From the IMG/VR virus record IMGVR_UViG_3300050821_002957, positions 124,001 through 188,000 of that record: a stretch of DNA of 64,000 bases, one strand, 5' to 3'. The notes below the pieces were generated by a model that did no database searches, had not been told where the DNA came from, and saw nothing but the letters and a program-made list of their open reading frames with translations. Below are positions 425 to 60,104 of this stretch, piece after piece. The stretch's first letter is position 1; every line of letters starts with the position of its first letter. Position numbers and translations under genes: made by a program.

Positions 425-1594
425 TTACACGGTTTGTATTCTTTCATTTTTTTCTTCAAGCAAACTGTCGAACCTAGGACCGCCCTCCACTAAATGAGCC
501 ACGTATCCAGCGTCTTCGGGACCGATCTTTTTTGGTCGAATCGCAAACAGCACTGCCGGATGATAAACTGTCGTCGGCACCAACGGTATAGAAGATGGCA
601 TCGAAATTCCAGTTTCAGCCTTCACATTCAAATTGTAAAAAGCATCGAACACAATGAAGACCGGCCATTGCGTATCGGTACGAACGACGGCACGCATTTT
701 CACTTTTTTCAATGCATCTTCCAATTTCAAAGGGTCCAAAGTCCGATGCTGCCCCAAGTGCAACATGACGATCTTGATGTCTGAATCACCCTTTGTCGAA
801 TGAGTCTGCAAGAATTTATACACCGACTGTGACAACTTCCCGGCTGGCGACGAATTGAACAATTTTTCCGCTGTCTGATACGCCCATCCAACGGCTTTCG
901 CTACGGTTCCATGTGTCGGACTTTCGGTGATCAATTTCATGTACCGATCTTCATTGGTCTTGGTCGCCAGGGGAAGCATCAGGCCGACATCCTTCGACTT
1001 AGTTCGTTCGTTGTATCCTTCATTGAACAGGCGTAAAACCGAAGACCAAGAATTACCGCCAACTTGTCCCAGTGTCTTTCCTGATTTCTTGGCACCGGCT
1101 TTCAATGAAATTTTCTCGAAGATGTACTTGTCAGTTTTTACGGTAATATCGGCTTTGGTTCCAGTGTTGTTTGAAATTCCATCAACATCAATCTCAAGTT
1201 TGTTGTCGATGTTGTTCTGATACATCGCTTCGGCCAGAGCTTCAATACGAGGAGAGTTGACATAAGAAGCAGCAGCATCACCGACACGAGCCAGGAGTTT
1301 CAGGTCCAATGCTCTTAAGTCGGCCATCATGCGTTTACCAAGATTCAGCAGGAAGACGATTTTGTCTTTAGCTGTACCGCCCATGTCCATTTTAACTTGA
1401 GACTTGGTGCTGCCTTTTGGTGTGAGAGGAGCCTTCTGCATGACCTTCAGAGCTTTCATGACATCTGAAGACGTGACTTTGCCGATTTGACCGTTTGGCT
1501 TACGGAGAATGAGTTTGGCTACGATGGCGGCACCAAGCACACCTTCTGCTAGATTGCCTTCGTTGACTACTTTGTCTTTTTGTTTGAGTGCCAC
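425..1594 (-). CDS. hypothetical phage protein, possible PD-(D/E)xK nuclease fold
   Basis: 389-aa ORF with a KADI...KISLK motif reminiscent of restriction-like nucleases; CTAAATA-N5-GTG start. Confidence 0.6.
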   Translation of the reverse strand: MALKQKDKVVNEGNLAEGVLGAAIVAKLILRKPNGQIGKVTSSDVMKALKVMQKAPLTPKGSTKSQVKMDMGGTAKDKIVFLLNLGKRMMADLRALDLKLLARVGDAAASYVNSPRIEALAEAMYQNNIDNKLEIDVDGISNNTGTKADITVKTDKYIFEKISLKAGAKKSGKTLGQVGGNSWSSVLRLFNEGYNERTKSKDVGLMLPLATKTNEDRYMKLITESPTHGTVAKAVGWAYQTAEKLFNSSPAGKLSQSVYKFLQTHSTKGDSDIKIVMLHLGQHRTLDPLKLEDALKKVKMRAVVRTDTQWPVFIVFDAFYNLNVKAETGISMPSSIPLVPTTVYHPAVLFAIRPKKIGPEDAGYVAHLVEGGPRFDSLLEEKNERIQTV

Positions 1595-1598
1595 ACGC

Positions 1599-2393
1599 CT
1601 ATTTAGAAAGAGCGTGTACTACTTTCTGAGGATTGACGTGATACCAACCGGAACAATGCAGACAGTTGATTTCGCCGACTTTGAGTCCTTTGTCAGTCTT
1701 AAAAATGTCAATGACGTAGCTGTCAGTAGCGAAGGGGAACTTTTCTACCATGCGTTGGGCGTAGCTGGTGACGTACCAATTCTCGTCGGCATTGGAATAC
1801 TGAATGTCACCATTGCGGACGTATTGGGAAGCTGAGACTACTTCACCGTTAATGACCCAGACTCGCCATTCATCAGTGATCGTTTTGACCGGCGCAGTGA
1901 CGAACAGAGAATCGCCATTGATCGGATGCCAGTCGTGATGATGTGGATTAGAATCGTTTTCTCGATCTTCTGTAAAACCACGAACCCAATCCGGCCATGC
2001 ATAGGCGTTGATAACTTTGCCTTTGATGATGTTAAATCCGGCAGCTTCACGAATATAAATTTTGCCTTGGTCTGGAACCACCAACTTGTCGAGCGGACCA
2101 ACCGTCATGTCGTAGTTGATGAATTCTTCGCCAAGAGCAAGCAGGCTGGAGTATTCGTAACTTTTGTCCCAGAACACTTTCCATCCTTGTTTCATTGCAT
2201 AGGCGACGAAGGATCGTGTACCAAAAGGAATCAGTTCGCTTGGTACAGTGTCGGTGAGCTTGAGATCAATCGTGGATTCCCAGAACACATAGTCGAGTTG
2301 GATACGGCGGTCGCCAGTTGCATCGATAGCGGCTGTGAATTGGTCGATCCCAAATTCGTCACCAAACATTGCATTTTGTACGAGCCAGATCAT
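1599..2393 (-). CDS. ATP-grasp domain protein (DUF4343/R2K-like)
   Basis: EWRVWVINGEVVSASQY, YVIDI and VGEINCLHCSGWY motifs. Confidence 0.75.
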   Translation of the reverse strand: MIWLVQNAMFGDEFGIDQFTAAIDATGDRRIQLDYVFWESTIDLKLTDTVPSELIPFGTRSFVAYAMKQGWKVFWDKSYEYSSLLALGEEFINYDMTVGPLDKLVVPDQGKIYIREAAGFNIIKGKVINAYAWPDWVRGFTEDRENDSNPHHHDWHPINGDSLFVTAPVKTITDEWRVWVINGEVVSASQYVRNGDIQYSNADENWYVTSYAQRMVEKFPFATDSYVIDIFKTDKGLKVGEINCLHCSGWYHVNPQKVVHALSK

Positions 2394-2513
2394 AGTGGGT
2401 CCTGAGATTTTTCAATCATGTCGATATTGCAATAGGGACAGGTCGCCGGGAAATTTGTAGATTCGCACTGACAGACGGGACAGGCCGAAAGAAAGGTCTG
2501 ATTGAAAGTTGAT

Positions 2514-2978
2514 TTAGTATCCATTTTTGGCAATAAAGTCCAATGTATCTTTGAGTGGCGTAACCAACAGAGGATGTCCAAGAGGCGTTTCGTAAAACCC
2601 TTTGCTGATTTCCATTCGCTTGATCGGATTGTGAAGGATCTTGAAATCGCCTTCGACTGGTTTCTTATTGACCGATTCAATTTTACCACAGACCAGACAC
2701 ATACGAGTTTCAGGATGCCAGTCGTCGTTGTCCCAGGAATACGAACCACCGTAGTAGGAGTGTAGAGTAACAACAACTTTGTGCGTACACTCAGCCTTAA
2801 GAGCTTCGATCTCGGCGTTCAATTCCCTAGTAAGTTTTTGCTTGAGAATTTCTTTGGTACGAATCTGCTTGGCGAGAGATTTGTAAGTCATTGACAACCA
2901 CCTGCATAAACCAGTAATACTGCTATGGTCAATGTTAACAAACCACCCACGCCGAAAGCTACTGGAATAGACCACCAA
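2514..2978 (-). CDS. hypothetical protein
   Basis: ORF in the co-directional gene run; real start probably at MTYKSL. Confidence 0.55.
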   Translation of the reverse strand: MVVYSSSFRRGWFVNIDHSSITGLCRWLSMTYKSLAKQIRTKEILKQKLTRELNAEIEALKAECTHKVVVTLHSYYGGSYSWDNDDWHPETRMCLVCGKIESVNKKPVEGDFKILHNPIKRMEISKGFYETPLGHPLLVTPLKDTLDFIAKNGY

Positions 2979-3025
2979 GGAACCGAATTCCTCTTCATGA
3001 ATTCTTCAATCATGAAATCATTCTA

Positions 3026-3565
3026 TCACGATTGTTTGACAGGCGCAATCAGAGCGACAGCGAGTTTGCCATCTTGACGTGGAATCGATTCAGGCTTTCC
3101 AAATGGCTCCAGGTCGGCAATGAGACGTTTGAGAAGATCGTATCCAATGTTGGTATGAGCGATCTCTCGGCCACGGAACTGAACGACGGCTCGGACTTTG
3201 TTGCCGTCTTTCAGGAATTCAATTGCATGTTTCTTTTTGAAATCGTAATCGTGATCGTCAGTGTTTGGCCGGAACTTCAGTTCTTTGATGACGGTGACGT
3301 GTTGGTGACGCTTTGCTTCTTGTTTTTTCTTTTTCTCTTCAAACAAATACTTACCGTGGTCCATAACTTTGGCGACGGGCGGCTTGGCAGTTGGAGAAAT
3401 GCAGATGAGATCAAGGTTGAGTGCTCTGGCTCGTTGGATTGCTTGATTGGTTGGAAGGATGACGTTGGAGCCATCTGGGAAGATTGTCCGAACTTCAGGA
3501 AACCGGATACCTTCGTTTACGTTATCTTTGATTTTTGGTCGTGGGGTTCTTGGTTGATATGCCAT
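3026..3565 (-). CDS. infC: translation initiation factor IF-3
   Basis: NEGIRFPEVR, KPPVAKVMDHGKYLFE, IKELKFRPNTDDHDYDFK and FRGRE motifs. Confidence 0.97.
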   Translation of the reverse strand: MAYQPRTPRPKIKDNVNEGIRFPEVRTIFPDGSNVILPTNQAIQRARALNLDLICISPTAKPPVAKVMDHGKYLFEEKKKKQEAKRHQHVTVIKELKFRPNTDDHDYDFKKKHAIEFLKDGNKVRAVVQFRGREIAHTNIGYDLLKRLIADLEPFGKPESIPRQDGKLAVALIAPVKQS

Positions 3566-3586
3566 TAAGTGTAATTATTTAGACCT

Positions 3587-4831: not shown

Positions 4832-4832
4832 T

Positions 4833-6208: not shown

Positions 6209-6285
6209 TGGTAGCGGATCTAGGAGTCGAACCTAGTATCTCAAGGTTATGAGTCTTGAATGGTTGTCCGTTCCACTCACCCGCA
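6209..6285 (-). tRNA. tRNA-Met(CAT), initiator-like (1:72 mismatch)
   Basis: Loop CTCATAA, CCA end, U1/U72 mismatch. Confidence 0.85.
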
Positions 6286-6803: not shown

Positions 6804-6880
6804 TGGTTGCGGCAGATGGCTTCGATCCATCGACTTCTTGCTTATGAGGCAAGCGTTCTACCGGGCTGAACTATACCGCA
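6804..6880 (-). tRNA. tRNA with CAT anticodon (Met or Ile2)
   Basis: Cloverleaf with cttgc-CTCATAA-gcaag anticodon arm; CCA. Confidence 0.9.
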
Positions 6881-7175: not shown

Positions 7176-7481
7176 TTATTTTCCGAGAAAGAACAAAGAC
7201 GAATAGATGCCGGTCACCGTACCAAGAACACCACCGGCAGTATAACCGATCCATTGAATAAAAGTGTCCTCATCTTTGCCTTTCATCATTTTCTTGATCA
7301 CAAAAAATGTCAATGAGGCCAGTGTTGTATCTGTGATGATAGCCGCCAGAACGTTAGCCTGTGCGACGGCTCTCCATGAGATTGTACAAAGACCCCAATT
7401 GAAAAACTGCATGGCTCCAATTTCAAGTGCATCAATGATCTGTTTCTTGTTGACTGCTGGAAATCGGAAAATTACTTTCAT
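7176..7481 (-). CDS. small membrane protein
   Basis: Three hydrophobic segments. Confidence 0.6.
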   Translation of the reverse strand: MKVIFRFPAVNKKQIIDALEIGAMQFFNWGLCTISWRAVAQANVLAAIITDTTLASLTFFVIKKMMKGKDEDTFIQWIGYTAGGVLGTVTGIYSSLFFLGK

Positions 7482-7494
7482 GCTTGGATTTAGA

Positions 7495-10935: not shown

Positions 10936-11496
10936 CTAAACTCGTTTCACATTGCGACCAGCAAACGTTTCTGTTTGACTGTTGCAATTCGGACATAACA
11001 GCCGAAGATTGTCCAGTCTGTTATCATCCTTCACCCCATTGATATGGTCAAGCACCATCACCAACATTTTTCCGTTCCATTCCGGCTGCTGGCCACAATC
11101 ACTACACTCATTCGCCAGTATACCATCTCGGATCAAACGATTTTTCAAGTGTCCTCGATTGTATGTCGATCCCTCTACCAAAACATTCAACAATGAAACT
11201 GATCGTTCCTCAATATTCGGTACGATTCGACCACACTCAACCGACTTATACCATGATGCCGGATTCATCCCAAATTTGTTAATACACTCCCGAAAAGAAG
11301 CTCCTCTATCAATCTCTTTTTGTACAGCAGTCCAATCATATCGCTGTGCGCCATCACGACCCATAAAGACTATGGACGGATTCTCAGCATGGCGGCGTGC
11401 ATGATAACTAATCGTAGATCGAGCACAACCCAATTCTTTTTCAATCTCTCGATACGAACGTCCTTCTTTCAACAACTGAATAATACGATGCTTCAT
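10936..11496 (-). CDS. HNH homing endonuclease with N-terminal HTH
   Basis: GRSYREIEKELG HTH; LDHINGVKDDNRLDNLRLLCPNCNSQT; CTAAATA-N5-ATG start. Confidence 0.92.
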   Translation of the reverse strand: MKHRIIQLLKEGRSYREIEKELGCARSTISYHARRHAENPSIVFMGRDGAQRYDWTAVQKEIDRGASFRECINKFGMNPASWYKSVECGRIVPNIEERSVSLLNVLVEGSTYNRGHLKNRLIRDGILANECSDCGQQPEWNGKMLVMVLDHINGVKDDNRLDNLRLLCPNCNSQTETFAGRNVKRV

Positions 11497-11574
11497 AATC
11501 CTATTTAGGTAGGATCAAGATTTCACCACATCATCCATACTACTTTGGTTCGACCGCCACTCACATTTTAGTTT

Positions 11575-13127: not shown

Positions 13128-14426
13128 CTACTGTGCCTGACCCTGATAGCTGGCCGCATCAATCGCAGCCGCCGCAATCTCTTCAGACGACTTTCTCAGT
13201 GTCTTCTTTACCTTCACCGGAGCCATATCTTCCGGCAATCGAAACGCAATGCCCTTGGCGATTTGCGGCAAACCATCGTGGCTGAAGCCCTGATACTTCA
13301 CCGTCAACTGCTGACCGAGATACTTATCGGCTTCCAAGAACAACTCAGCACGGTCGGCCAACGTTCCATTCGGCACAACAAAGAACACACCCGGAACATC
13401 ATCACGATAGGCCGTCTTCATCAAGTTGCCGGTTTTTTCTTTACCTTCCAGGCTGAACCCAGGAACCACACACTGCCAAATCACACAACCGGCATGACCA
13501 CCTTCGGCCTGCTTGAAACCAACAACCTCGAACTCGGCATCTTCAAAGAGCTTGATCTTCAACAAATTCTTCGAGCGCACACCGGACTCATACTTGCCAT
13601 GCTTATTCCGCAACATCGAACCTTCAAATTTACTCTCGATGCATTTCTCTTGAAAAGCCAGCACTTGCTCTTCGTTTTCCACTTCCAACGTCAAAACCTT
13701 CACCAGATGCGGCGTACCAGGATCAGCCGTCATCCAATCGCCCGGAACCAACGCAACCAAATCGGCGATGCGCTGTTCCTGAATGCGATCTTCTTCACCT
13801 TCGCACATTGGAACGTCATAAATGTGAAATTCCAATTTCTTCGACTCAGGATAATTGTTCGACAACCACTTCTGAATCGTCTGCCGCTTTACACCGTGAA
13901 AATACATCTCGCCGTCAAACATGGCGTCACGAGGCATCACCTTTTCCAACTGCGCCTTGATGTGCGGAGCCTGCCATTCCTTGCCGCCACGAGTCATTAA
14001 GACGATCCGGTCGCCGTCCCAATACGCTAGACACCGGGCACCATCCAACTTCGGCTGCACGAACGCCGGATACTTCGCATAACGATTCGTGCTCTTTGCT
14101 GGCCCACGTTCTTTATCAATGAACTTTTCGTTCGGAGCCAACATCACTTCGATCTTCCGGGTCACGCCGACGTTTTCGACGCCGACCACGTACTTGTGCT
14201 CAACCTTGTGCTTCCATTCGGCGACGGCTTCATTTTCAGCCTGAATTTCCGGGGTAGTTGCATTCGCTTTTCCCACGTTCTTGGCTTCACATGCCCGTCG
14301 ATGGGTGATCAGCTTGCCACCGACCTGTCCAGCTTCGATTACAATCTCATTGCCTTCGGTCCAAATTCGCCACTGAAGCAAAGCTCCAGTCGAACTCTTT
14401 CGATAAAGTGTTGGTAAAGTGTCCAT
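13128..14426 (-). CDS. ATP-dependent DNA ligase
   Basis: QPKLDGARC, FDGEMY, EGSMLR, LLKIK and LTVKYQ motifs; start at MDTLPTL after a TATAAT promoter. Confidence 0.93.
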   Translation of the reverse strand: MDTLPTLYRKSSTGALLQWRIWTEGNEIVIEAGQVGGKLITHRRACEAKNVGKANATTPEIQAENEAVAEWKHKVEHKYVVGVENVGVTRKIEVMLAPNEKFIDKERGPAKSTNRYAKYPAFVQPKLDGARCLAYWDGDRIVLMTRGGKEWQAPHIKAQLEKVMPRDAMFDGEMYFHGVKRQTIQKWLSNNYPESKKLEFHIYDVPMCEGEEDRIQEQRIADLVALVPGDWMTADPGTPHLVKVLTLEVENEEQVLAFQEKCIESKFEGSMLRNKHGKYESGVRSKNLLKIKLFEDAEFEVVGFKQAEGGHAGCVIWQCVVPGFSLEGKEKTGNLMKTAYRDDVPGVFFVVPNGTLADRAELFLEADKYLGQQLTVKYQGFSHDGLPQIAKGIAFRLPEDMAPVKVKKTLRKSSEEIAAAAIDAASYQGQAQ

Positions 14427-14516
14427 GCTGAAAATTATACCACACGCAGACAAAAAGATGCAACTACTTGCGAACGTTTATTTTAGGGGAACCGAGAATC
14501 AGGACGATTTCGGCGG

Positions 14517-14600
14517 TTACTGATGTCGATGAACCTGCACACCAGTCCCCACACGTTCTTGCTGTTGCTCGTGTTGGTGTTGATGTGTCATGTTCTTCAC
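14517..14600 (-). promoter_or_regulatory. His/Gln/Glu-rich leader mini-ORF (MKN)MTHQHQHEQQQERVGTGVQVHRHQ*
   Basis: TATAAATA (14606-14613) 5 nt before GTG; hairpin after the stop; upstream of Glu, Glu, Gln, Gln, His tRNAs. Confidence 0.65.
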
Positions 14601-15525
14601 GTTTTTATTTATACAGACAAACAAATTTGGTGGAAGGTCTCTCAGCCATATGGGTGGTATACGTGCCTTCCACCATCCATATCGCACCCTGGTCGTCAAA
14701 GAACCTTCCAGGATCACAGGGTTAATTAGTGTTCCAAAAAGCCTTACAGCCAACCCTGTATCTTTTATACCACTTCTTTTTCAGGATGTCAAGCACCAAC
14801 CAAAAAAGATTTTATATCTGGGTTTTGGATTGTTTAGCGGCTTGATGCTGCCATCTGTGTTGATCTTGATTATGCGTTCGGTGTCTGCCATTATGTTCCT
14901 TTTTTGACGCATCCACATTTTCTCCAATGTAGATGTCCATTACCATGTAGACACTTCACGCAACCGCACGAAGGACGCTGCCAAAGCTCATTGCCATGAA
15001 TGCATTTTACAGGCATCGGCGTCGGAAGTGCCTTGAAATGAAAAAATTTTCTGAAACGATCACGCATCGCCACAGTTCGAGGATCACCCAGGTCAATTTT
15101 ATTCAGATAATCAGCCATCAAAAGTGCAAAGGGCATTATTCCTCCGCTTGTGGACCCAGAAGAGCTTCGATCACAGCCGGATCATTGGTTGTGCTGATAA
15201 TCATATCGGGAATCTGACAACCACTTCCATCGTCATCTCGTGCATCAGGTTTGAAAACGAGAACAGCAGTGAGTCCATTTTGACCTGCTTCTTTGATCAG
15301 ATCGAGATATTCTTGATATGAGGTCATCCATGATCGTAATTATACAACAGGGATGAAAATAAATCCAGGCTCTTGATTAGTTATTTGTTGGTAGACGATC
15401 AGTGCTTCGTTTGGTGTCAAGGAGTCATCAACGTAAACGATAGGGCAAATTTCTTTGGCTTTCACAACATCATCAGAATGACAGATGATGTATTTAACGA
15501 GTGAAGGTGAGGCATTCATAAATTG

Positions 15526-25297: not shown

Positions 25298-25662
25298 AGT
25301 TGTTCCTTCCGGTCTCGATAGACCTTTCCTGAACCATCATAAAACATCTACATCTACTTTGTCAAGCAGATACATCAAGTGCTAGATAGCAATATGGTTT
25401 GTCTCTTTGATCGTTTCCTCACCGAAGAACTCTCGGTGCCATCAGATGCTATTCTCAGCTTTTACGCCCATCCTCGAATTCAAGTCCAAGTATACGATGA
25501 TTCGCCCTGTTATACGGCACTTTTCTACGTGGACGGCAAACCGACACTCAAAGAAAATCTAATCGACGGACTCTCAAAATTTTTTGAACGAACAATCATC
25601 GACGCAAATTTTCACGCCTTCCTAATTGAAATTGTCTCATAAAACGCTGTCTAAATGGATGC

Positions 25663-26271
25663 ATGAAGACACCAGAAGTTCTCTACCACTATACCACCGG
25701 CAACATTTTCCGCAAGATCCTTCATCAAGGTGCAATCGAACCAGATCGTACCGAACCAAAAAATGAAAATGAAGTTCCGACCGTCACTTTTTCGAGCAAT
25801 CCTGTTTGGGAGCGCACTCGTTTTCGTGTTGGTAAACTGCCTGACGGCCAATTGATCATGATGAGTCAGCAGCTTTTGAAAGAATTTGATGGCGGTGTAT
25901 TTCGTATTTTGGTGCCTGGAGAGCTTGCTCCGCTTACTTGGCACGACATGAAAGACACCTGCGGCATCAGTAAAGAAGCCATGAAAGGCATCTACGATTT
26001 TGCACTTCAGGTTGGCGCAAAAACCTCTCAATGGTTTGCCACGACCGAACGAGTACCTGAAGATGTATGGATCAATGTCGAAAAATTGAATGACACTGGG
26101 GAATGGGTCGAACTGGCTGAAGATGAAATTCCTGAACCATCTGCCGAAGAATCTGGTAACATGGGATTCAATACTTCCAGTCCCATAGAAATTGGAAACA
26201 AAGAAGAATTGGTTCCTGTGACCGATGAAAATGTTCTTCGTGAAGCCGGATCATTGGTCTCCGCAGAATAA
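25663..26271 (+). CDS. hypothetical protein (LYHYTT motif, possibly ADP-ribosyltransferase-like)
   Basis: LYHYTT...I..G.I and VTFSSNP motifs. Confidence 0.5.
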   Translation: MKTPEVLYHYTTGNIFRKILHQGAIEPDRTEPKNENEVPTVTFSSNPVWERTRFRVGKLPDGQLIMMSQQLLKEFDGGVFRILVPGELAPLTWHDMKDTCGISKEAMKGIYDFALQVGAKTSQWFATTERVPEDVWINVEKLNDTGEWVELAEDEIPEPSAEESGNMGFNTSSPIEIGNKEELVPVTDENVLREAGSLVSAE

Positions 26272-26418: not shown

Positions 26419-26883
26419 ATGAGCGAAAGACCGCTACCAGGAAAACCACAACCAAGAGAACGCAGACCGTTGGCGGAACCGGAATGGGATGGAAATGCTT
26501 GCCTCTTTATTACGGCACATGCAGCCCGTCGTATGGAGGAACGTTTTGGTCTCACCCGGCTTCGGACTACACCGTTTGAAATTCAGACGATGTATTGTGA
26601 AGCAACCGACATTGACCGGCCTGTCTGGGCACTTCGGATCAGCAATGGAAAATCAAATGGATGGATTCTTGGCAGATGGGAACTCGCCGAACCCGTTCTG
26701 GCCCGAGGAATCTACAAATATTGGTTTGTCGGCACCACAGTTATCAACGACAAACAGTTCAATTATTCCCGGCTAGAGGTTCGTAAGACCATCAGAATCA
26801 ACGTCAAACGAATCATCAACGAATCTTCACGAATACGTCCAAAAAGTGAAGATACATCTATTGACATTTACGACCAACTCTGA
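26419..26883 (+). CDS. hypothetical protein
   Basis: ITAHAARRMEERF motif reminiscent of RelE/Barnase-like RNase folds. Confidence 0.5.
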   Translation: MSERPLPGKPQPRERRPLAEPEWDGNACLFITAHAARRMEERFGLTRLRTTPFEIQTMYCEATDIDRPVWALRISNGKSNGWILGRWELAEPVLARGIYKYWFVGTTVINDKQFNYSRLEVRKTIRINVKRIINESSRIRPKSEDTSIDIYDQL

Positions 26884-26889
26884 TACGAT
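26850..26889 (+). promoter_or_regulatory. sigma70-type promoter with upstream AGATACATCT palindrome
   Basis: TTGACA-N17-TACGAT-N6-ATG. Confidence 0.75.
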
Positions 26890-26895
26890 TGGTTC

Positions 26896-27952: not shown

Positions 27953-27992
27953 AGATACATCTATTGACATCAACCCAGTTGTTTGGTATTCT
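27953..27992 (+). promoter_or_regulatory. sigma70-type promoter with AGATACATCT palindrome
   Basis: TTGACA-N17-TATTCT-N6-ATG. Confidence 0.75.
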
Positions 27993-27998
27993 TGATTC

Positions 27999-33323: not shown

Positions 33324-33343
33324 AGAGGTTAACATCAAAACTA

Positions 33344-35731: not shown

Positions 35732-35999
35732 AATCCTCTTTACAATCGTTCATGGATCTGTTAGTATTTGGTCCATGAACGATTCCCTAAAAGGCACAAT
35801 GAATTTGAATGAACTGATCATGGGTGTTCGGGCGGAACCGGCATTTAATGGTAAGGTTCGTCTTAAGTATCTTGCAATTTCAGGAGGCTGTGGCCCGGAA
35901 CTGAGCATGGACTTCGATTTAGCAAGAAAAACCATCATGGCATTGGAAACGGCAATGGCGGGTGGAACCTACGAAAGCGAATAAAGGTACATCTACCTG

Positions 36000-36028
36000 T
36001 TGACAATCGCTCATGAGCCTGCTAGAAT
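36000..36028 (+). promoter_or_regulatory. sigma70-type promoter for a leaderless transcript
   Basis: TTGACA-N17-TAGAAT-N6-ATG. Confidence 0.75.
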
Positions 36029-36034
36029 GGGTTC

Positions 36035-36376
36035 ATGAGCGATTCCTTTTTGAACGGTTCAATGCCTGGAGATTACGTCGAGCTAGGCGATGTCTGCCGA
36101 AAACGCCTGGGAATGCAGTGTCAATACGGCTCCCGGTACGCTAACGATCTCTGCAAAGACCTTCGTTACATCGGAACAACCGCCGACTACCACTCGATGC
36201 AGATTCACCGAGATGACGTTGAAGAGTATGTCGGTCGAGTGGCCATCTATCGCCATAAAATTGGTGCCATTGGGGAAGCCGAATCATTTGCGTTGTGTCC
36301 TGCCGCTCATAGATTTGATTCGCATATTTTTGATGTGGTCGCCGAGTTCATTCGCAAAAAGGACGTAAAATGCTGA
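36035..36376 (+). CDS. hypothetical protein
   Basis: ORF directly after the promoter. Confidence 0.6.
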   Translation: MSDSFLNGSMPGDYVELGDVCRKRLGMQCQYGSRYANDLCKDLRYIGTTADYHSMQIHRDDVEEYVGRVAIYRHKIGAIGEAESFALCPAAHRFDSHIFDVVAEFIRKKDVKC

Positions 36377-40789: not shown

Positions 40790-41767
40790 TTAGTATTGCT
40801 TTGCGTCTGGTGCGAACGGGCCAGCTTTGTGGTGAGCCATGAGTGAATCGTGATGTTGGACGCCTTTGGTAATGTGCGAGTGCATCGATTTCAAATCTGT
40901 ACCGCCATCATGAAATGCACCACCACGCCATGAGTGTTTATCAGGACGGCCCTTGTGTGTAGTCGTCACTAACTGGACACCTGATTTCCAATGATGATCT
41001 GGTTGATATGTATGGACAGTCGTTGCGCCTTTCTTCCATGTACTCTTATGTTCCAGACCAGCTTTTGTAGCTTCGTCGTGCCACGGATGACGTTCTTCTG
41101 GCTTTACATCTTTTGCATCGGTTAAGGTAGAATGGGCTTCGTTCATTTCTTCGTCCTCATTTCTAAGTCTACCAAATTCGATGTTTTTTTTGCGACGTTC
41201 AAGTGCCAAATCCCGAACTGCCTTTTGCTTCACAATTGGATCAGCACTCAACAAACTGGTGTTGATGTTCTTTCGCAAATTATAAAGTCTACGAATTTCC
41301 ATAAGACTTTCACCGTTCGGTCCAACTTCTTCGTGTAAACTGCGGAGATGATGTTGAAGATCACGAAGTGGAGTTGCATTACCGCCGACACCCCGTTTCT
41401 TTCCTGCCTTTACGTGATTCCAGCTACGATCATCACCAAAAGTTAGAGTATGACCGGATTCATGCTTCCAAGTGTTCGGCGAGCCTTTGACACGTTTGTA
41501 CTCGTGCTTTCTGGCGTGATGCTCCTGGCGTTCTTTGATGTGCGCCATACGCTCTGCTTTACGACTCTCTGCGGCTTCCTTCTTGGCGTGCAACTTCAAC
41601 AATGCTTTATACTTAGGATGTTTCGTGCCGTACTTTGAACTAGCCGACTTGATGTGACTTTTGAGAGTTTTGAGATCCCGAATTTCGTTCAGGTTCATTT
41701 CATCCAACAGGACGAGTTCTTGCAGTTCTTCCGCAAGCAATTGACCGAGTTCTTTAGCGTATGACAT
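40790..41767 (-). CDS. His/Lys-rich late protein, possibly virion-internal
   Basis: CTAAATA-N5-ATG start; strongly basic and His-rich. Confidence 0.6.
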   Translation of the reverse strand: MSYAKELGQLLAEELQELVLLDEMNLNEIRDLKTLKSHIKSASSKYGTKHPKYKALLKLHAKKEAAESRKAERMAHIKERQEHHARKHEYKRVKGSPNTWKHESGHTLTFGDDRSWNHVKAGKKRGVGGNATPLRDLQHHLRSLHEEVGPNGESLMEIRRLYNLRKNINTSLLSADPIVKQKAVRDLALERRKKNIEFGRLRNEDEEMNEAHSTLTDAKDVKPEERHPWHDEATKAGLEHKSTWKKGATTVHTYQPDHHWKSGVQLVTTTHKGRPDKHSWRGGAFHDGGTDLKSMHSHITKGVQHHDSLMAHHKAGPFAPDAKQY

Positions 41768-41820
41768 GTCTGTATTTAGAACAACTTGACAGAACCCAAA
41801 TTCGTGTTGAAATAGTTGGC

Positions 41821-42303: not shown

Positions 42304-42770
42304 CGGTCTTTCCATTGTTTGCTGCTTTTGTCGGTGGTGTTTTGGTGATTTATGCTGCGTTCCACAAATCTAACGAATCAGGAACCATCGAAGGCAAAAT
42401 TAGAAATCTTCGGGTGAGTCGGCCACTTTACAAGAACACCAAGCGAGCCGGGACACGGTTTGATTTTCAGGTCTGGGTGGAGAACAATTCCGGGCGTGAT
42501 GTCATATTCGGCTTTCCGACCATAGAAATCAATTTGAAAGACGGCAAGGTTCATGAATGGAAACTTCCTGACCAAATTGGATTCGTACCTAAAGAAAGTT
42601 ACGTACTAATTCCAAAAAGCAGAAGTGAATTCATCAGATTGTATCTTGATGATGTGGATCAATCGGCACTTGACCTGAAGTCGTTGTCGGTGAAAGTTAA
42701 GGATAATAAAGGAATGTTGTATGTTTTCATTGAGGAGTAAGAGACACCGCTAGACCGCTAAATAGTAGCG

Positions 42771-43064
42771 ATGGCAAGAACCACCAATCAACTGGCCGAA
42801 GGTTTCAGTTTCGCCGGAACGTTTCTCTTCTCGCAGAAAGCGGATGCTGAGGGCATAGCAGCAATGTTAGGTCTTCAGGGTGCCTTTCCGATGCAAACCG
42901 ATGAAGGTTTGTTTTGGATGCCCGGAACATCATACGACGAACTTCTTCAGCGCATCTATTCTGATTGGACGTTACCCGACAAAGCCACGGTTCCTCTAGC
43001 CCATCCTCAAGATCCAAACAGACTGACGTTTCTTGCTTACCTAGATACTCAGGGAGAGCAATAA
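42771..43064 (+). CDS. hypothetical late protein
   Basis: CTAAATA-N6-ATG start. Confidence 0.55.
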   Translation: MARTTNQLAEGFSFAGTFLFSQKADAEGIAAMLGLQGAFPMQTDEGLFWMPGTSYDELLQRIYSDWTLPDKATVPLAHPQDPNRLTFLAYLDTQGEQ

Positions 43065-44144: not shown

Positions 44145-45137
44145 ATTATGGAATATTATTGCCCATCATGTCGAGATTGGTTCGACACCACATACTGTGC
44201 ATCACACTATGAAAGTGTTCACGGTCAGTCTGACGTAACATTTGAAAAGTTGAGACAACGCATGAAAGTGGTTGGTGGGTTAGACGTTAGAGACGAAAAA
44301 GAGGCCGCACTTGAAGAAGAGGAGCGGCCCGTTTTCGTGACAAATAATTTCAGACATCAATTGTAGAGATAGAGGAACATATGACAACAATCGCAACATA
44401 CAATCAAGCTCGTTCGCTGGCACATGCCCTTGGAGAGTTTAATATCGGCATAAAGCCTGAAACCTTCGAGATGACAACCTCTGGAATCTACATTCCTCGT
44501 TGGATAGGTTATAGCCGGATTCCTCATGAATTCGATCCTATCACTGGTGTCGCTCAATGGTATTTCTTTTTCCGTTTTGTCAACACAGCAACCGCCGATC
44601 TCAATGTCGGAGAAGCTCTTGACTTCCAAAACGGAAAACCGTCTGGCGCTCGTGGAATGGCTGCATTGGTCAACAAGATCAAGTCAAACGTTCGTGTCGT
44701 AAAACCGTAACTTGACGTTTTGAGATTGTGCGGTATGTTAGGATTATGCCGCCAACACGAAGACTTGAAGCACGAGATACACCACTACTCGGTATTGCCA
44801 AACTTTCTGAAGGTGTTCCTCGCATTGTTGAAATTTTAGACAATCTGTTCAAATATGCTTCGATGATCGATCCCTACTCTATTTTGGGTGGGGCGGCGTA
44901 TCTTGTCTATTTGGATGAATTAGGAATCTATTGTAGTGACATCGGAGCTTTGTTTAGGCGTTGCAACCAAAATGTTCTGGAGATGGCAACCGTATTACGT
45001 GCCTATCAATTGGGCATTCTGACTGACACCGAAATTCGTTCAGTTATTGATTCTAAACATGGATTTAATACTCAGGCTCTTTTTACCGCCGTCCAAGCGG
45101 AATTGCCGGGTTTTGGACAAATGTCCATACAGAAAGA

Positions 45138-51693: not shown

Positions 51694-52230
51694 ATGAGCC
51701 TGTTTCTCAGAGCATTGGTGCGTAGCGAAGGCAAGAGTTGCGAAGGCAAACTCAAGTATCCTCGTGAGGACTCTGCTGTCCGTAATGCTCTCGCAATGAC
51801 CGAAAAGAAAAAGAAGCTCCACGCTGCCGAGGGCCGGGAGTCAACCGAATTTTTTGAGACGTACAAATGCAACTTTTGTGACGGCTGGCATATCGGTCAC
51901 CAAACCAACTTCGATTGGATTCCACAGTCACACCGGGCGCAGCATTTGATGATGAATAAGTACGAGTGCTTCAGCAAAATCGATGAAGTCGTGTGTGGCA
52001 AAATTTGGATCAGCAACACAGTTTTCTCGAATCGAATTCTGGAGCATTTTCCGAACGTCAAAGATGAAATGGAGCGTCTTGTTATTTGTCCGAAATGCAA
52101 AGGAACACTGTACAAGAATCATGGCCGTCTTTGGGTGAATCTGGAGACGATCAACCCAGAATCCACTGAAACCATCGAAGCACTTTGGGCCAAACAAGAT
52201 GTATCTGTTGACAATCTCGCCGAATCGTGA
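51694..52230 (+). CDS. hypothetical zinc-finger protein
   Basis: YKCNFCDGWHIGH motif. Confidence 0.6.
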   Translation: MSLFLRALVRSEGKSCEGKLKYPREDSAVRNALAMTEKKKKLHAAEGRESTEFFETYKCNFCDGWHIGHQTNFDWIPQSHRAQHLMMNKYECFSKIDEVVCGKIWISNTVFSNRILEHFPNVKDEMERLVICPKCKGTLYKNHGRLWVNLETINPESTETIEALWAKQDVSVDNLAES

Positions 52231-52236
52231 TAGAGT
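52197..52236 (+). promoter_or_regulatory. sigma70-type promoter with AGATGTATCT palindrome
   Basis: TTGACA-N17-TAGAGT-N6-ATG. Confidence 0.7.
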
Positions 52237-52586
52237 TTGTTCATGACGTACCGTATTCGTTTTCGCAACATAGGTTCCTTGCACGAATCGGAACCAAAGA
52301 CTTTCAATGAGGCATGGGTTATCGCCATCAATCTCTCCCATTGGAATCAGCGTGTCGATATTATTGACGCTGAGACCGGCGAAGTACTCAAATCCTCAGA
52401 ACCGTACTCCGAGAATGGGGCACGGCAACTTGAAGCGATGCTGGCGCAGTAAAGGCCAATCCTGGTGATTCGTGGAGCCTCTGCTGTTCGAGGCTCTCCC
52501 CACCGGGGTCTTATAAATAAAAACGTGGCAACCCCACATAGGAGGTCATCAATGTCAAGATTTATAGCTTAGGAGGCTTTAAATAC

Positions 52587-55886: not shown

Positions 55887-56073
55887 TGTCACAAGGCGTT
55901 TTTAGTTCTTGTGGTTTTTGTGGACTCCATCTCCCTTTGACTTTTGATGAACAAAAAGATGCCGACCGAGCATGGAAATTCAGCGGAATGAACATCCATG
56001 AATGGCATCGCCGCAAGTTTCCAAATTACCATCCCCGGTTGACATTCAAGGTTCCGCTTGATATCATTGAGAA

Positions 56074-57054
56074 ATGTCAAAGCCAGACAAAAAAGATTCA
56101 GTGATCCTTACCGGGACCATTGGATCTCATAGCTACGGAACGGCCACGCCGACTTCAGATTACGACTACATGTCCGTCGTGATTGCATCGTCTGACGTGT
56201 ACCTGGGTCTTGACAATTGGGGAACTGCTGGAACCAAAGACGACGTTTACGAAGATCCCGAAAAGAGTCTGGTCGAACATCGGTATTTTGAATTGAAAAA
56301 GTTCGTTGGTATGTGCGCCGGAATGAACCCAAATGCAGTTCCGCTTTTGTGGCTGCAACCGGAGCACTACGAAACCATGTCGGCGGCTGGTAGAAAGCTC
56401 GTCCAGGCCCGAGAGATTTTTAATTCCAAAAAAGCATACGATACGTTCTCTGGTTACGCTCATGGTCAGCTTCAAAAAATGGGCGGCGTGTTCAATGATG
56501 CCGAAGAGTCGAACAAACTCTTGAAGCAAGGTCATATCAAATTTCAAGACTGGTCTGAAGACATGATCAAGCTGCTTCGGATGATTCGTGATGGAAAGTC
56601 ACCGATCCCTGAAGACGCCAAGCCTGCGGACATTTACATTTACGACGAAGGATGGTTGAACGCTCTTATTGCCTTGAAGACTCATTCCAAGGAAGAGATC
56701 AAGCGTATCAAAGACGGTCCAATCACCGGGCGCATGGGAGCGAAGCGGAAAGAGCTTCGTTCTCAATATGGTTTCGACACTAAATTTGCTTTTCATACGA
56801 TTCGACTGATGAGAATGTGCGTCGAATTTCTTACGCACCCTGAAGAAGGTCTGAAGGTGTACCGCAAAGACATCGATGCTGACTTCTTGTACTCAATCAG
56901 AACCGGCGCTGTCTCACAAGAAGACATCAAGAAGATGGCCGACGACCTGTTCGCTCAAGCCAAAGAAGCCTTGGTCACCACGTCTCTTCCAGATAAGCCT
57001 GACACCGAAGCAATTCATAACTTGACGATGGACCTGATTAGATCATCCATTTGA
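56074..57054 (+). CDS. Pol-beta-type nucleotidyltransferase (YcgL/RlaP-like)
   Basis: GSHSYGTATPTSDYD, NPN and FDTKFAFHTIRL motifs. Confidence 0.85.
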   Translation: MSKPDKKDSVILTGTIGSHSYGTATPTSDYDYMSVVIASSDVYLGLDNWGTAGTKDDVYEDPEKSLVEHRYFELKKFVGMCAGMNPNAVPLLWLQPEHYETMSAAGRKLVQAREIFNSKKAYDTFSGYAHGQLQKMGGVFNDAEESNKLLKQGHIKFQDWSEDMIKLLRMIRDGKSPIPEDAKPADIYIYDEGWLNALIALKTHSKEEIKRIKDGPITGRMGAKRKELRSQYGFDTKFAFHTIRLMRMCVEFLTHPEEGLKVYRKDIDADFLYSIRTGAVSQEDIKKMADDLFAQAKEALVTTSLPDKPDTEAIHNLTMDLIRSSI

Positions 57055-58308: not shown

Positions 58309-58367
58309 TTTTAAGAGCGTCTAGAATCGTCTAGACAATTTCAACGAGGGTGTGTTAGTATGAGAAC

Positions 58368-59060: not shown

Positions 59061-59214
59061 TGATACTACAATCACTAAAACAATTTTTGGGACGCATTAT
59101 GTTTTAGTCTCCTTGGGATGTTCCCTTCGGTATTTAGTTGCTAGAATATTTCTTCCGGCATAGGAAAATTTTATAAGGTATTGACAGGATACGGGTCTTG
59201 TGCTATAAATAGAG

Positions 59215-59490
59215 TCGTAGCAGATAGTCGAAGTGAACGAAGAACGCTTCTTGGACATGGGTTCAATTCCCATCGGCTCCACCAAAATTCTGATTTTAGG
59301 CATCAGAGAACTTATGGGGCCGCCCCGGTTTCGACAGGATGAGATGTTGCGTAAGCAGGGCTACCGTGGTCCTTGTCCACGTTATCCAGAAGGAATCATA
59401 AACGCTAATGCACCTGCATTTGCTTTCGCTGCCGCTGCCTAAACAGCGCTCGAACGAAGTCGGAGAACTTTGTTAAAGAACTCCCAACAG
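59215..59490 (+). ncRNA. ssrA: two-piece (circularly permuted) tmRNA, tag ANAPAFAFAAAA
   Basis: T arm and CGGCUCCACCA (ends 59284) precede GGGGCCG...GGUUUCGAC (starts 59316); G3.U70 pair; tag ORF 59404-59442; TTGACA/TATAAA promoter upstream. Confidence 0.92.
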
Positions 59491-59521
59491 AAGGCCGGGG
59501 CAACTCGGCCTTTTGCTTTTT
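59491..59521 (+). terminator. intrinsic terminator after the tmRNA
   Basis: aaggccggg-gcaa-ctcggcctt hairpin followed by a T run. Confidence 0.85.
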
Positions 59522-59681
59522 GAAAGGTTGTGTTTATGAGACGACATTTGAAAATGGTCCATCACCACGGCAAACGAGCACTAAAGTCTAAGTACGGACA
59601 GGTGTTCATCATCCTGTGGTTCGTGCCGGAAGCCATTGCACTTTTTGGTTTGATATGGGCTGCATGGCGACACCTTGTAAA

Positions 59682-60032
59682 ATGAAGTTTCTTCTGTTCA
59701 TTCTCTTATTCTTCGCATCAAGCGCCTGGGCCGCAGAGAAGCCTCTTGTCGAAAAATGCTTCAAAGTCCAGTCTCTCATCAAGGCAGATCCAGAGCATTA
59801 TTGGGCTACCTGGAAGAACGCCTGTCCGTACATCATTGACTCGATCTACGTAAACGTCGATTTCAAAGACAAGGCCGGAAGCATTCTTGGACATGGAGTC
59901 TGGTCGCTACATTATGTCAAACCGGGCGAGGGCCGCTACATTCGATTCTCAACTCCATCCTTGACAAGTGACTATTTCTCTGTTATCTTAAAAGAGATTA
60001 CTTTGGACGCTTTCAAAGCTCTACGGTACTAA
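59682..60032 (+). CDS. secreted hypothetical protein
   Basis: Signal peptide MKFLLFILLFFASSAWA. Confidence 0.6.
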   Translation: MKFLLFILLFFASSAWAAEKPLVEKCFKVQSLIKADPEHYWATWKNACPYIIDSIYVNVDFKDKAGSILGHGVWSLHYVKPGEGRYIRFSTPSLTSDYFSVILKEITLDAFKALRY

Positions 60033-60040
60033 ATACGAAC

Positions 60041-60104
60041 ATGGTACGTTTTTCCACCATCACGACAAGCACTACCACGACCGTCTAGTTCCTCTAGAAC
60101 GGTC
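60041..60104 (+). promoter_or_regulatory. thrL-like leader peptide MVRFSTITTSTTTTV* (60041-60088) with hairpin (60079-60104)
   Basis: 7 Thr in 10 codons; CTAAATA-N5-ATG; 35 nt upstream of two tRNA-Thr genes. Confidence 0.8.

What the first reader, a model, noticed from the sequence alone, without database searches (positions are those of the whole stretch)
1594..60041. Pervasive leaderless transcripts from both promoter classes, plus a phage IF-3
A late-type motif (C/TA)TAAAT(A/G) sits 5-6 nt before start codons at 1594, 11496, 14600, 25663, 41767, 42771 and 60041 (T4 late consensus is TATAAATA). Sigma70-type TTGACA-N17-(-10) boxes sit 6-7 nt before the ATG at 26896, 27999, 28968, 36035 and 52243. 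These genes lack SD sequences. IF-3 level is known to modulate leaderless initiation, so phage infC and the initiator-like tRNA may bias ribosomes toward phage mRNAs.
Basis: partly seen in the sequence, partly recalled or inferred. Interest (0 to 1): 0.6.

Follow-up and report, generated by a model that had tools for sequence, protein, structure and literature searches.

The report
Leaderless genes in a giant soil phage
A 406-kb T4-related soil phage places most of its early promoters and about half of its late promoters so that transcription should begin on the start codon itself, giving mRNAs with no ribosome-binding leader. Its own IF-3 gene is real but ordinary, and the proposed link between IF-3 and these mRNAs is unproven and probably runs the other way.

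Summary
The window is part of a 405,631-bp T4-superfamily phage: gp23-type capsid, a gp55 late-sigma homologue, 45 tRNAs and a permuted tmRNA.

- **Early promoters:** TTGAC-N17-19-TAnnnT is followed by ATG after exactly 6 nt in 40 of 151 hits.
- **Late promoters:** CTAAAT is followed by ATG after exactly 6 nt in 31 of 176 hits. The reverse-motif control is flat.
- **Start-site signature:** both geometries put +1 on the A of ATG. The base before it is a pyrimidine in 39/41 early and 31/35 late cases, against 50% at SD-led starts.
- **Late motif identity:** CTAAATA is the known gp55-type late promoter variant of phage Aeh1.
- **Partition:** high-copy virion genes (capsid, scaffold, sheath, tube) keep 20-50-nt leaders with SD. 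Low-copy late genes and most early genes have none.
- **RNA evidence:** one soil metatranscriptome contig ends 2 nt from a predicted start. No proper start-site map exists.

IF-3 (3026-3565, minus) is canonical, closest to Bryobacterales IF-3, and driven by a late promoter. The "initiator-like" tRNA fails three initiator hallmarks. Sites 14600 and 60041 are doubtful as protein starts. I rate this a new variant of a known kind.

The parts
26861..26898 (+). Early sigma70-type promoter (TTGACA-N17-TACGAT) plus 6 nt plus ATG of a 93-aa ORFan (26896-27177). The palindrome TAGATACATCTA abuts the -35.
27964..28001 (+). Early promoter (TTGACA-N14-TGGTATTCT) plus 6 nt plus ATG 27999. The ORF runs to 28367, but coding signal moves to the -1 frame near 28250 and continues to 28591.
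28932..28970 (+). Early promoter (TTGACA ... TAGGCT) plus 7 nt plus ATG 28968 (113 aa)
30952..30989 (+). Early promoter (TTGACA ... TATGAT) plus 7 nt plus GTG 30987 (171 aa), filling the 44-nt gap after the RNA ligase gene. A metatranscriptome contig ends at 30985.
33307..33346 (+). Early-type promoter plus 8 nt plus ATG 33344 of a 795-aa AAA ATPase
35739..35777 (+). Promoter with weaker -35 (TTTACA ... TGTTAGTAT) plus 6 nt plus ATG 35775 (69 aa)
36000..36037 (+). Early promoter (TTGACA ... TGCTAGAAT) plus 6 nt plus ATG 36035 (113 aa)
44712..44748 (+). Early promoter (TTGACG ... TATGTT) plus 6 nt plus ATG 44746 (132 aa)
52208..52245 (+). Early promoter (TTGACA ... TGATAGAGT) plus 6 nt plus ATG 52243 (69 aa)
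56039..56076 (+). Early promoter (TTGACA ... TGATATCAT) plus 6 nt plus ATG 56074 of a 326-aa RlaP-family (RNA repair) protein. The Pfam match starts at residue 9.
14424..14439 (-). Extended -10 (TGGTATAAT) plus 7 nt plus ATG 14426 of the ATP-dependent DNA ligase (13128-14426). The -35 is weak (TTGCAT).
1592..1606 (-). Late gp55-type promoter CTAAATA plus 5 nt plus GTG 1594 (389-aa gene 425-1594). The orthologue in related phage locus L003 keeps CTAAAT-N6-GTG, and an independent gene caller starts the gene there.
7479..7493 (-). Late promoter CTAAAT plus 6 nt plus ATG 7481 (101 aa).
11494..11508 (-). Late promoter CTAAATA plus 5 nt plus ATG 11496 of an HNH endonuclease (186 aa)
25651..25665 (+). 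Late promoter CTAAATG plus 5 nt plus ATG 25663 (202 aa)
41765..41779 (-). Late promoter CTAAATA plus 5 nt plus ATG 41767 (325 aa)
42758..42773 (+). Late promoter CTAAATA plus 6 nt plus ATG 42771 (97 aa)
60029..60043 (+). Late promoter CTAAATA plus 5 nt plus ATG 60041. The ATG opens only 15 codons and tRNA-Thr genes follow at 60124 and 60203, so this is probably the tRNA promoter and not a protein start.
14598..14613 (-). TATAAATA plus 5 nt plus GTG 14600. It opens only 27 codons with no coding signal. Doubtful as a leaderless gene.
3563..3582 (-). Late promoter CTAAATA plus 10 nt plus ATG of infC. The predicted mRNA has a 5-nt leader without SD. The same spacing is found in L003, and a 6-nt leader in L004.
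3026..3565 (-). Phage translation initiation factor IF-3 (179 aa, ATG start)
6804..6880 (-). tRNA with CAU anticodon, elongator-like and not an initiator
6212..6285 (-). Second tRNA-like gene with a CAU anticodon loop, found by Rfam only. Its anticodon stem also lacks the three G:C pairs.

Best explanation
The window belongs to a 406-kb T4-superfamily phage from soil, probably infecting Bryobacterales (Acidobacteriota). It uses two promoter classes.

1. **Early genes.** These have host-type sigma70 promoters (TTGACA, a 17-nt spacer, usually an extended TGnTAnnnT). Many also carry a 10-12-bp palindrome, TAGAT(A/G)(C/T)ATCTA, next to the -35 or inside the spacer. That palindrome is presumably a regulator site.
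2. **Late genes.** These have CTAAATA, a -10-like element with no -35. It is presumably read by host core RNA polymerase carrying the phage's gp55-like sigma.

In about three quarters of the early promoters and about half of the late ones, the element sits so that +1 falls on the A of the start codon. The mRNA would therefore begin with AUG and have no Shine-Dalgarno leader. It would have to be translated by the leaderless route, which in E. coli means 70S or initiator-tRNA-dependent recognition of a 5'-terminal AUG.

Proteins needed in bulk (major head, scaffold, sheath, tube, terminase) instead keep 20-50-nt leaders with GGAG-type SD sequences. The initiation mode therefore seems to be used to set expression level.

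The phage IF-3 is an ordinary factor derived from the host lineage and expressed from a late promoter. Its most likely role is to sustain or retune initiation late in infection. A specific link to leaderless mRNAs is not shown.

**Shown here:** the motifs, their spacing and statistics, the gp55, gp23 and IF-3 homologies, and conservation in related phages.
**Inferred:** the transcription start sites, the polymerase and sigma assignments, the timing, and the mode of translation.
For: **Spacing statistics.** (figures in the observation check).

**Start-site signature.**
- Consensus ...TTGACAt-N13-TG.TA...T....tcATG and CTAAATAg...cATG, with pyrimidine at -1 in 39/41 and 31/35 cases.
- SD-led starts show 105/211 pyrimidines at -1.

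**Share of promoters at leaderless distance.**
- Of high-confidence early promoters within 100 nt of a gene start, 49 of 66 sit at 5-8 nt. The rest have SD leaders.
- CTAAAT[AG] lies 5-8 nt from a gene start 36 times and 9-60 nt away 27 times.

**Late machinery.**
- gp55 homologue: phrog_234, E=1e-53; 34% identity to T4 gp55, E=5e-22; sigma region 2 present and region 4 absent.
- gp45-like clamp, E=1.4e-5.
- gp23-type capsid, E=2e-141.
- CTAAATA at -12 to -6 is the Aeh1 late consensus (PMC1524935).

**Genes behind each arrangement.**
- Leaderless late genes include neck Hc2, a baseplate wedge subunit, endonuclease VII, a RuvC-like resolvase, HNH endonucleases and the CCA-adding enzyme.
- Leadered late genes are scaffold, major head, sheath, terminase, tube and another baseplate wedge subunit.

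**Start codons look right.**
- PHROG profiles align from residues 1-5 of the leaderless proteins.
- There is no excess of hidden downstream SD starts.

**Conservation.** In 20-kb loci of three related 370-400-kb phages, the motifs sit 5-7 nt before starts that an independent gene caller chose, for example L003 11354 and 4359, L004 14663 and 6597, L006 2126, 9308 and 11654.

**RNA.** A metatranscriptome contig ends at 30985, 2 nt before the predicted leaderless GTG at 30987.

**Host.**
- The 80 best cellular IF-3 relatives are almost all Bryobacterales or Terriglobia.
- Those loci show a weaker start-codon peak 6-10 nt after extended -10 boxes.
- Acidobacteria were predicted to have 9.7-19.4% leaderless genes (PMC3160421).
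Against: - No transcription start site has been mapped. The RNA evidence is a single assembled contig end from a library that may contain DNA. My rough estimate is about a 2% chance of such a coincidence.
- Gene starts come from my own simple gene finder, and its start choice favoured the motifs. The unbiased motif-to-ATG distance tests do not depend on it.
- Six late and three early candidates at the 6-nt distance use GTG, which is poor for leaderless initiation in E. coli.
- The host is inferred from IF-3 similarity only, at 56-63% identity.
- gp33 was not looked for, and the gp45 match is weak.
Confidence: 0.75

Rival explanations
1. One reading: the phage IF-3 together with an initiator-like tRNA biases ribosomes toward the phage's leaderless mRNAs.
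For: - IF-3 is present and intact.
- It is conserved in at least three related 370-400-kb phages.
- IF-3 level does alter leaderless translation. One report finds IF3 is required for leaderless translation at normal tRNA and mRNA levels (PMC9031893).
Against: - The tabulated net effect of IF3 on leaderless mRNA is inhibition, and infC overexpression inhibits model leaderless mRNAs in vivo (PMC9031893).
- phiYS40 is reported to favour its leaderless mRNAs by lowering IF3 and raising IF2 (PMC3594737).
- The phage IF-3 shows only seven conservative clade-specific substitutions, mostly R to K, and keeps R99, R131 and R133 equivalents.
- Neither CAU tRNA has initiator hallmarks.
- The phage encodes no IF1, IF2 or formyltransferase.
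Confidence: 0.1
2. The motifs next to the start codons are not promoters. They would be translation or RNA-processing signals (an A/U-rich enhancer, or a cleavage site that trims leaders), and the real promoters lie further upstream.
For: - CTAAAT as a whole is not over-represented in the genome: 176 copies against about 200 expected from length.
- No start-site map exists.
Against: - The early class has a full -35, a 17-nt spacer and an extended -10.
- CTAAATA equals a published gp55-type late promoter, and the phage has gp55.
- The same motif lies 14-50 nt upstream of virion genes with an SD in between. That fits a promoter and not a ribosome-binding signal.
- The pyrimidine at -1 and purine at +1 is a start-site signature.
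Confidence: 0.05
3. The promoters are real, but many true start codons lie downstream, or transcription starts a few nt earlier. The mRNAs would then have short conventional leaders rather than none.
For: - Some spacings are 7-8 nt, and IF-3 and portal have predicted 4-5-nt leaders.
- Independent gene callers chose downstream starts for a few orthologues, for example L003 2222 rather than 2177 and L004 13347 rather than 13263.
Against: - The sharp mode is at exactly 6 nt.
- Downstream in-frame starts with SD occur in only 7 of 96 cases, the same as background.
- Profile alignments begin at residues 1-5.
- Leaders of 0-5 nt without SD still need the leaderless-type route.
Confidence: 0.1

Closest known systems
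Thermus thermophilus phage phiYS40 (and P23-45)
   Same: A large lytic phage whose middle and late mRNAs are mostly leaderless, in a host phylum that uses leaderless mRNAs. The phage's dealings with initiation factors were linked to this (PMC3594737). Details for P23-45 come from my own recollection and were not checked here.
   Different: - phiYS40 is reported to lower host IF3 and raise IF2, whereas this phage encodes IF-3 and expresses it late.
- Here the early class is leaderless as well, and the late class uses a T4 gp55-type promoter.
- The host is probably an acidobacterium and not Thermus.
T4-type late promoters: T4 TATAAATA and Aeromonas phage Aeh1 CTAAATA, read by gp55
   Same: - The same motif and register, -12/-13 to -6 (PMC1524935).
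- A gp55 homologue, a gp45-like clamp, and gp23-type capsid and virion genes downstream.
   Different: - In T4 the motif followed by N5-ATG occurs once in 169 kb, and in Aeh1 once in 233 kb. Here CTAAATA-N5-ATG occurs 22 times in 406 kb.
- So the leaderless placement is not a general T4-family trait.
-10 region adjacent to ORFs in Deinococcus-Thermus, Actinobacteria and Acidobacteria (bacterial leaderless genes)
   Same: TAnnnT about 6-7 nt before the start codon with no SD (PMC3160421; PMC12340547, title and abstract only).
   Different: - Here the arrangement is in a phage, and a full -35 plus extended -10 is usual.
- A second, phage-specific sigma class shares the same geometry.
Huge phages that encode translation factors (IF1, IF3, ribosomal proteins)
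   Same: IF-3 genes are already reported in phages above 200 kb, including soil ones (PMC11748809).
   Different: Here IF-3 can be placed in the late class, its nearest cellular kin are named (Bryobacterales), and it sits in a genome with a measured leaderless bias.
Jumbo phages with mapped start sites (phiKZ, AR9)
   Same: Giant phages with distinct early and late promoter classes.
   Different: - phiKZ showed no leaderless transcript (PMC8244752), and AR9 5' UTRs are 26-491 nt (PMC5312081).
- Both use their own RNA polymerases, whereas this phage appears to use host polymerase with host sigma and then gp55.

Membership tests
Bacterial leaderless mRNA genes (-10 element adjacent to the ORF) | The -10 element ends 6-7 nt before the start codon | tested here: met
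   There is a sharp mode at 6 nt for both classes.
Bacterial leaderless mRNA genes (-10 element adjacent to the ORF) | No Shine-Dalgarno sequence, and no alternative SD-led start nearby | tested here: met
   Promoter boxes fill the upstream region. Only 7 of 96 genes have a downstream in-frame start with SD within 40 codons, against 22 of 211 in controls.
Bacterial leaderless mRNA genes (-10 element adjacent to the ORF) | Primary 5' end mapped at the start codon | tested here: inconclusive
   One RNA-library contig ends at 30985, against the predicted GTG at 30987. Contigs cannot prove a 5' end, and there are no raw reads.
Bacterial leaderless mRNA genes (-10 element adjacent to the ORF) | Translation of the 5'-terminal AUG | not testable with these tools
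   This needs reporters, ribosome profiling or N-terminal proteomics.
T4-type (gp55-dependent) late transcription | gp55-family sigma with region 2 only | tested here: met
   G000 321960-322628: phrog_234 E=1e-53; 34% identity to T4 gp55, E=5e-22; Sigma70_r2 found and r4 not found.
T4-type (gp55-dependent) late transcription | TATAAATA-like element at -13/-12 to -6 with no -35, upstream of virion genes | tested here: met
   CTAAATA lies before the head, scaffold, sheath, tube, terminase, portal, neck and baseplate genes. No conserved upstream box appears in the consensus. The motif equals the Aeh1 consensus.
T4-type (gp55-dependent) late transcription | Sliding clamp gp45 and co-activator gp33 | tested here: inconclusive
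   A gp45-like ORF is at G000 342056-342535 (28% identity, E=1.4e-5). The Pfam gp45 C-domain was not found. gp33 was not searched.
Sigma70-type promoter | TTGACA, a 17+/-1 spacer, TAnnnT, often with an extended TG | tested here: met
   See the consensus. 45 of the 56 hits at the leaderless distance have the TG extension.
Bacterial IF-3 (infC) | IF3_N and IF3_C domains joined by a basic linker | tested here: met
   87 and 102 bits, both above cut-off. Full-length alignment to solved IF-3 chains, E=1e-37.
Bacterial IF-3 (infC) | Unusual AUU start codon used for autoregulation (established knowledge for many bacteria) | tested here: not met
   The phage gene and its three jumbo-phage relatives start with ATG. 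Two more distant viral homologues (L008, L009) show ATT at the aligned position.
Bacterial initiator tRNA-fMet | CAU anticodon | tested here: met
   Found at 6804-6880 and in the Rfam-only tRNA at 6212-6285.
Bacterial initiator tRNA-fMet | Unpaired 1:72 (C1 x A72), three consecutive G:C pairs at 29-31:39-41, and A11:U24 | tested here: not met
   - 6804-6880 has a U1:A72 pair, the anticodon stem CUUGC/GCAAG, and U11:A24.
- 6212-6285 has the stem CAAG/CUUG.
- The hallmark definitions come from established knowledge.

The most novel reading that the evidence does not exclude
The late-expressed phage IF-3 may be a translational switch that works against leaderless mRNAs. Following the E. coli rule that excess IF-3 disfavours 5'-terminal AUGs, a late burst of IF-3 would do two things. 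It would damp translation of the mostly leaderless early mRNAs, and it would shift ribosomes to the SD-led mRNAs for capsid, scaffold, sheath and tube. Its own mRNA has a conserved 5-6-nt leader without SD in three of four related phages. That would make it self-limiting, replacing the AUU-start autoregulation of bacterial infC.
Probability: 0.15. Interest if true: 0.75.

Novelty: new variant of a known kind. Interest (0 to 1): 0.5.

Why it matters
- It gives a concrete, testable case of a virus using two initiation modes side by side: leaderless for early and low-copy late genes, SD-led for bulk virion proteins.
- It shows that a T4-type gp55 promoter can be positioned to make leaderless mRNA, which T4 and Aeh1 do not do.
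- It ties a giant uncultured soil phage to a likely acidobacterial host whose gene expression is barely studied.
- It offers a natural system for asking what a virus-encoded IF-3 does to leaderless versus SD-led initiation.
- It is a practical warning for annotation. Gene callers that expect an SD will misplace or miss starts in such phages.

Tried and rejected
- blastn of 6 kb against GenBank phages gave only short ligase hits.
- My first pattern, ACATCTNNTTGACA, found nothing because the true spacing is ATCT-A-TTGACA.
- The AAA ATPase found no relatives in IMG/VR.
- IF-3 in IMG/VR gave the same phage again plus two distant phages.
- The host-clade analysis from longest-ORF starts was weak, because start calls in 61% GC genomes are unreliable. 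The motif-to-start version was clearer.
- Pfam and PHROGs found nothing for the small early leaderless genes.
- The Pfam gp45 C-domain was not found.
- A literature search for the bare motif returned only noise.
- The original phiYS40 paper is not held, so I cite a review for it.
- A listing of all TAAATA words in T4 and Aeh1 was uninformative.
- The last 108 nt of the contig match 1353-1460 at 97%. I read this as a repeated promoter region, not a terminal overlap.
- I did not use the large representative protein search, structure prediction, complex prediction or any alternative genetic code, because none was needed.

Full report
**What the window is**

The window is bases 124,001-188,000 of a 405,631-bp IMG/VR virus record, 46% GC and judged complete.
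- The genome carries 45 tRNA genes and a permuted tmRNA.
- It has a gp23-type major capsid gene (PF07068, E=2e-141).
- It has T4-like portal, sheath, tube, scaffold, terminase, neck and baseplate genes.
- It has a homologue of the T4 late sigma gp55.

It is therefore a giant member of the T4 superfamily. It has no close relative among deposited phages. IF-3 searches found three related 370-400-kb metagenome contigs.

**Checking the observation**

All twelve sites carry the stated motifs at the stated distance.

In the window:
- CTAAAT-N6-ATG occurs 5 times against 0.56 expected.
- The full sigma70-type pattern ending in N6-ATG occurs 6 times against 0.05 expected.

Across the genome I measured, without any gene calls, the distance from each motif to the next ATG:
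- After TTGAC-N17-19-TAnnnT it is exactly 6 nt in 40 of 151 cases.
- After CTAAAT it is exactly 6 nt in 31 of 176 cases. The reversed word gives a flat profile.
- Nearly all these ATGs open real ORFs.

Aligned at the start codon, the two classes give these consensus sequences:
- TTGACAt-N13-TG.TA...T....tcATG
- CTAAATAg...cATG

Position -1 is a pyrimidine in 39 of 41 early and 31 of 35 late cases, against 105 of 211 at SD-led starts. A pyrimidine at -1 followed by a purine at +1 is the usual signature of a bacterial transcription start. This is the strongest sequence-only argument that transcription begins on the A of ATG.

**Why the geometry means leaderless**
- A sigma70 -10 hexamer spans -12 to -7 (established knowledge). 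Six intervening bases therefore put +1 on the first base of the codon.
- For T4-type late promoters the motif spans -13 to -6, and the Aeh1 variant CTAAATA starts at -12 (PMC1524935). CTAAATA-N5-ATG therefore does the same.

**The late motif is a promoter, not a ribosome signal**
- The phage encodes a gp55 homologue at genome 321,960-322,628. It matches phrog_234 at E=1e-53 and is 34% identical to T4 gp55. It has sigma region 2 but no region 4, which fits a promoter with no -35.
- A gp45-like clamp is present at weak similarity.
- The same CTAAATA lies 14-50 nt upstream of the scaffold, major head, sheath, terminase, tube and a baseplate gene, with GGAG-type SD sequences in between.
- The motif therefore occurs at variable distance when a leader is present, as a promoter should.

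**How pervasive it is**
- Of high-confidence early promoters that lie within 100 nt of a gene start, 49 of 66 are at the leaderless distance and the rest have SD leaders.
- CTAAAT[AG] sits 5-8 nt from a start 36 times and 9-60 nt away 27 times.
- In all, roughly 95 of about 620 predicted genes (about 15%) are affected. This covers most first genes of transcription units.
- SD is otherwise in use: about 30% of first starts against 6% of internal ATGs.

**A functional partition**
- Leaderless late genes encode neck protein Hc2, a baseplate wedge subunit, endonuclease VII, a RuvC-like resolvase, several HNH endonucleases and the CCA-adding enzyme.
- Portal and IF-3 have predicted leaders of 4-5 nt without SD.
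- Bulk virion proteins are SD-led.
- Early leaderless genes are mostly small ORFans. They also include an AAA ATPase and an RlaP-family protein.

**Are the start codons right?**
- PHROG profiles align from residues 1-5 of the leaderless proteins.
- Only 7 of 96 candidates have a downstream in-frame start with an SD, which equals background.
- In the related phages, an independent gene caller placed starts exactly 5-7 nt after the motifs in at least seven cases. One is the orthologue of the window's gene at 1594.

**RNA evidence**
- One soil metatranscriptome holds part of the region.
- Laid on 25,400-31,399, its 257-nt contig begins at 30,985. That is 2 nt before the predicted leaderless GTG at 30,987.
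- By my rough estimate such a coincidence has about a 2% chance. It is still only one assembled contig end, and it comes from a library that may contain DNA. I treat it as suggestive only.

- Site 14600 is a TATAAATA-N5-GTG that opens only 27 codons without coding signal.
- Site 60041 opens only 15 codons and is followed by two tRNA-Thr genes. It is probably the tRNA promoter.
- At 27999 the ATG is sound, but coding potential moves to the -1 frame near a T-TTG-GGG run at about 28,249 and continues to 28,591. An independent assembly shows the same sequence.

**Comparison within the T4 family and with other giant phages**
- TATAAATA-N5-ATG occurs once in T4, and CTAAATA-N5-ATG once in Aeh1. This phage has 22. 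The leaderless placement is therefore a feature of this clade and not of gp55 promoters in general.
- The two giant phages with mapped start sites, phiKZ and AR9, have no leaderless transcripts.

**Host**
- The 80 best cellular relatives of the phage IF-3 are almost all Bryobacterales, Solibacteraceae or other Terriglobia, at 56-63% identity.
- In those 1.3 Mb of host-clade DNA, starts of long ORFs are enriched 6-10 nt after extended -10 boxes, though far less sharply than in the phage.
- An earlier survey predicted 9.7-19.4% leaderless genes in all three Acidobacteria it examined (PMC3160421).
- The phage thus probably exploits a route that its host already uses.

**IF-3**
- The gene at 3026-3565 (minus) has both domains and aligns end to end with solved IF-3 structures.
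- It differs from cellular relatives at only seven positions, all conservative.
- It starts with ATG rather than the AUU of many bacterial infC genes.
- In four related phages it is preceded by a (C/A)TAAATA late motif. The predicted leader is 5-6 nt in three of them, and about 28 nt with an SD in the fourth. It is therefore a late gene.
- The phage also encodes peptide deformylase, but no IF1, IF2 or formyltransferase.

- The review literature lists IF3 as inhibitory to leaderless translation. Overexpressing infC lowers it in vivo, although one study finds IF3 is needed at normal tRNA and mRNA levels (PMC9031893).
- Phage phiYS40, the closest precedent, is reported to favour its leaderless mRNAs by lowering IF3 and raising IF2 (PMC3594737).
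- The CAU tRNA at 6804-6880 has a paired U1:A72, an anticodon stem without the three G:C pairs, and U11:A24. A second CAU tRNA-like gene at 6212-6285 also lacks the G:C signature.
- The proposed bias toward leaderless phage mRNAs is therefore unsupported.
- The opposite idea, a late IF-3 burst that turns down leaderless early mRNAs in favour of SD-led virion mRNAs, fits the layout better. It is equally untested.

**Verdict**
- The leaderless reading is well supported by sequence evidence, but no start-site map exists.
- The IF-3 and tRNA mechanism is not supported.
- Leaderless phage mRNAs, gp55 promoters and phage IF-3 are each already known. Their combination is new: gp55 promoters set at leaderless distance, and a split between leaderless and SD-led genes by the required protein level. 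I rate it a new variant of a known kind, of moderate interest.

Noticed in passing
window 26849-26860, 27952-27963, 52197-52207 and elsewhere; genome-wide: The palindrome AGAT(A/G)(C/T)ATCT, often the full TAGAT..ATCTA, occurs 29 times in the genome against about 2 in shuffles. In 14 promoters it ends 1 nt before the -35, and in 6 it lies inside the spacer. It looks like the operator of an unknown dimeric regulator of early promoters. Variants occur in related phages L004 and L006.
   Followed up: partly
window 27999-28591 (+), shift near 28249-28255: Coding potential runs in the frame of ATG 27999 up to about 28250, then in the -1 frame to the stop at 28591. A T-TTG-GGG run sits at the switch. 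An independent DNA assembly shows the same sequence. This could be a programmed -1 frameshift in a small membrane protein, or two overlapping genes.
   Followed up: partly
window 59223-59442 (+): A phage-encoded permuted (two-piece) tmRNA, Rfam RF04321 at 93.5 bits. ARAGORN reads the tag peptide as ANAPAFAFAAAA.
   Followed up: no
window 37459-37977 (+): A phage peptide deformylase (PF01327, E=1e-44). Together with IF-3 it is one of only two protein translation or maturation factors I found. IF1, IF2 and formyltransferase are absent.
   Followed up: partly
window 13128-14426 (-), 29516-30943 (+), 56074-57054 (+); genome 281663-282913: A set of nucleic-acid repair genes: an ATP-dependent DNA ligase, an RNA ligase, an RlaP-family nucleotidyltransferase and a CCA-adding enzyme, beside 45 tRNAs. 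This suggests tRNA repair against host anticodon nucleases.
   Followed up: no
window 31502-32554 (+), 19831-21675 (-), 1599-2393 (-): Auxiliary genes: an IMP dehydrogenase / GMP reductase family enzyme, a 614-aa protein with a C-terminal OmpA domain, and an R2K-clade ATP-grasp protein next to IF-3. The ATP-grasp / IF-3 pairing is kept in L003.
   Followed up: no
window 30955-30989 (+): The early promoter before GTG 30987 is itself a near-perfect inverted repeat (CACGCCTGCAAT ... ATTGTAGGCGTG). It therefore also scores as a promoter on the opposite strand. It may double as the terminator of the RNA ligase gene.
   Followed up: no
genome 3664-3756 (outside the window): A 93-nt tRNA-Ile (UAU) with extra sequence after the anticodon arm, possibly an intron or a long variable region.
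   Followed up: no
genome 405524-405631 versus 1353-1460: The last 108 nt of the record repeat an early-promoter region near the left end at 97% identity. Neighbouring early gene cassettes at both ends look paralogous.
   Followed up: partly
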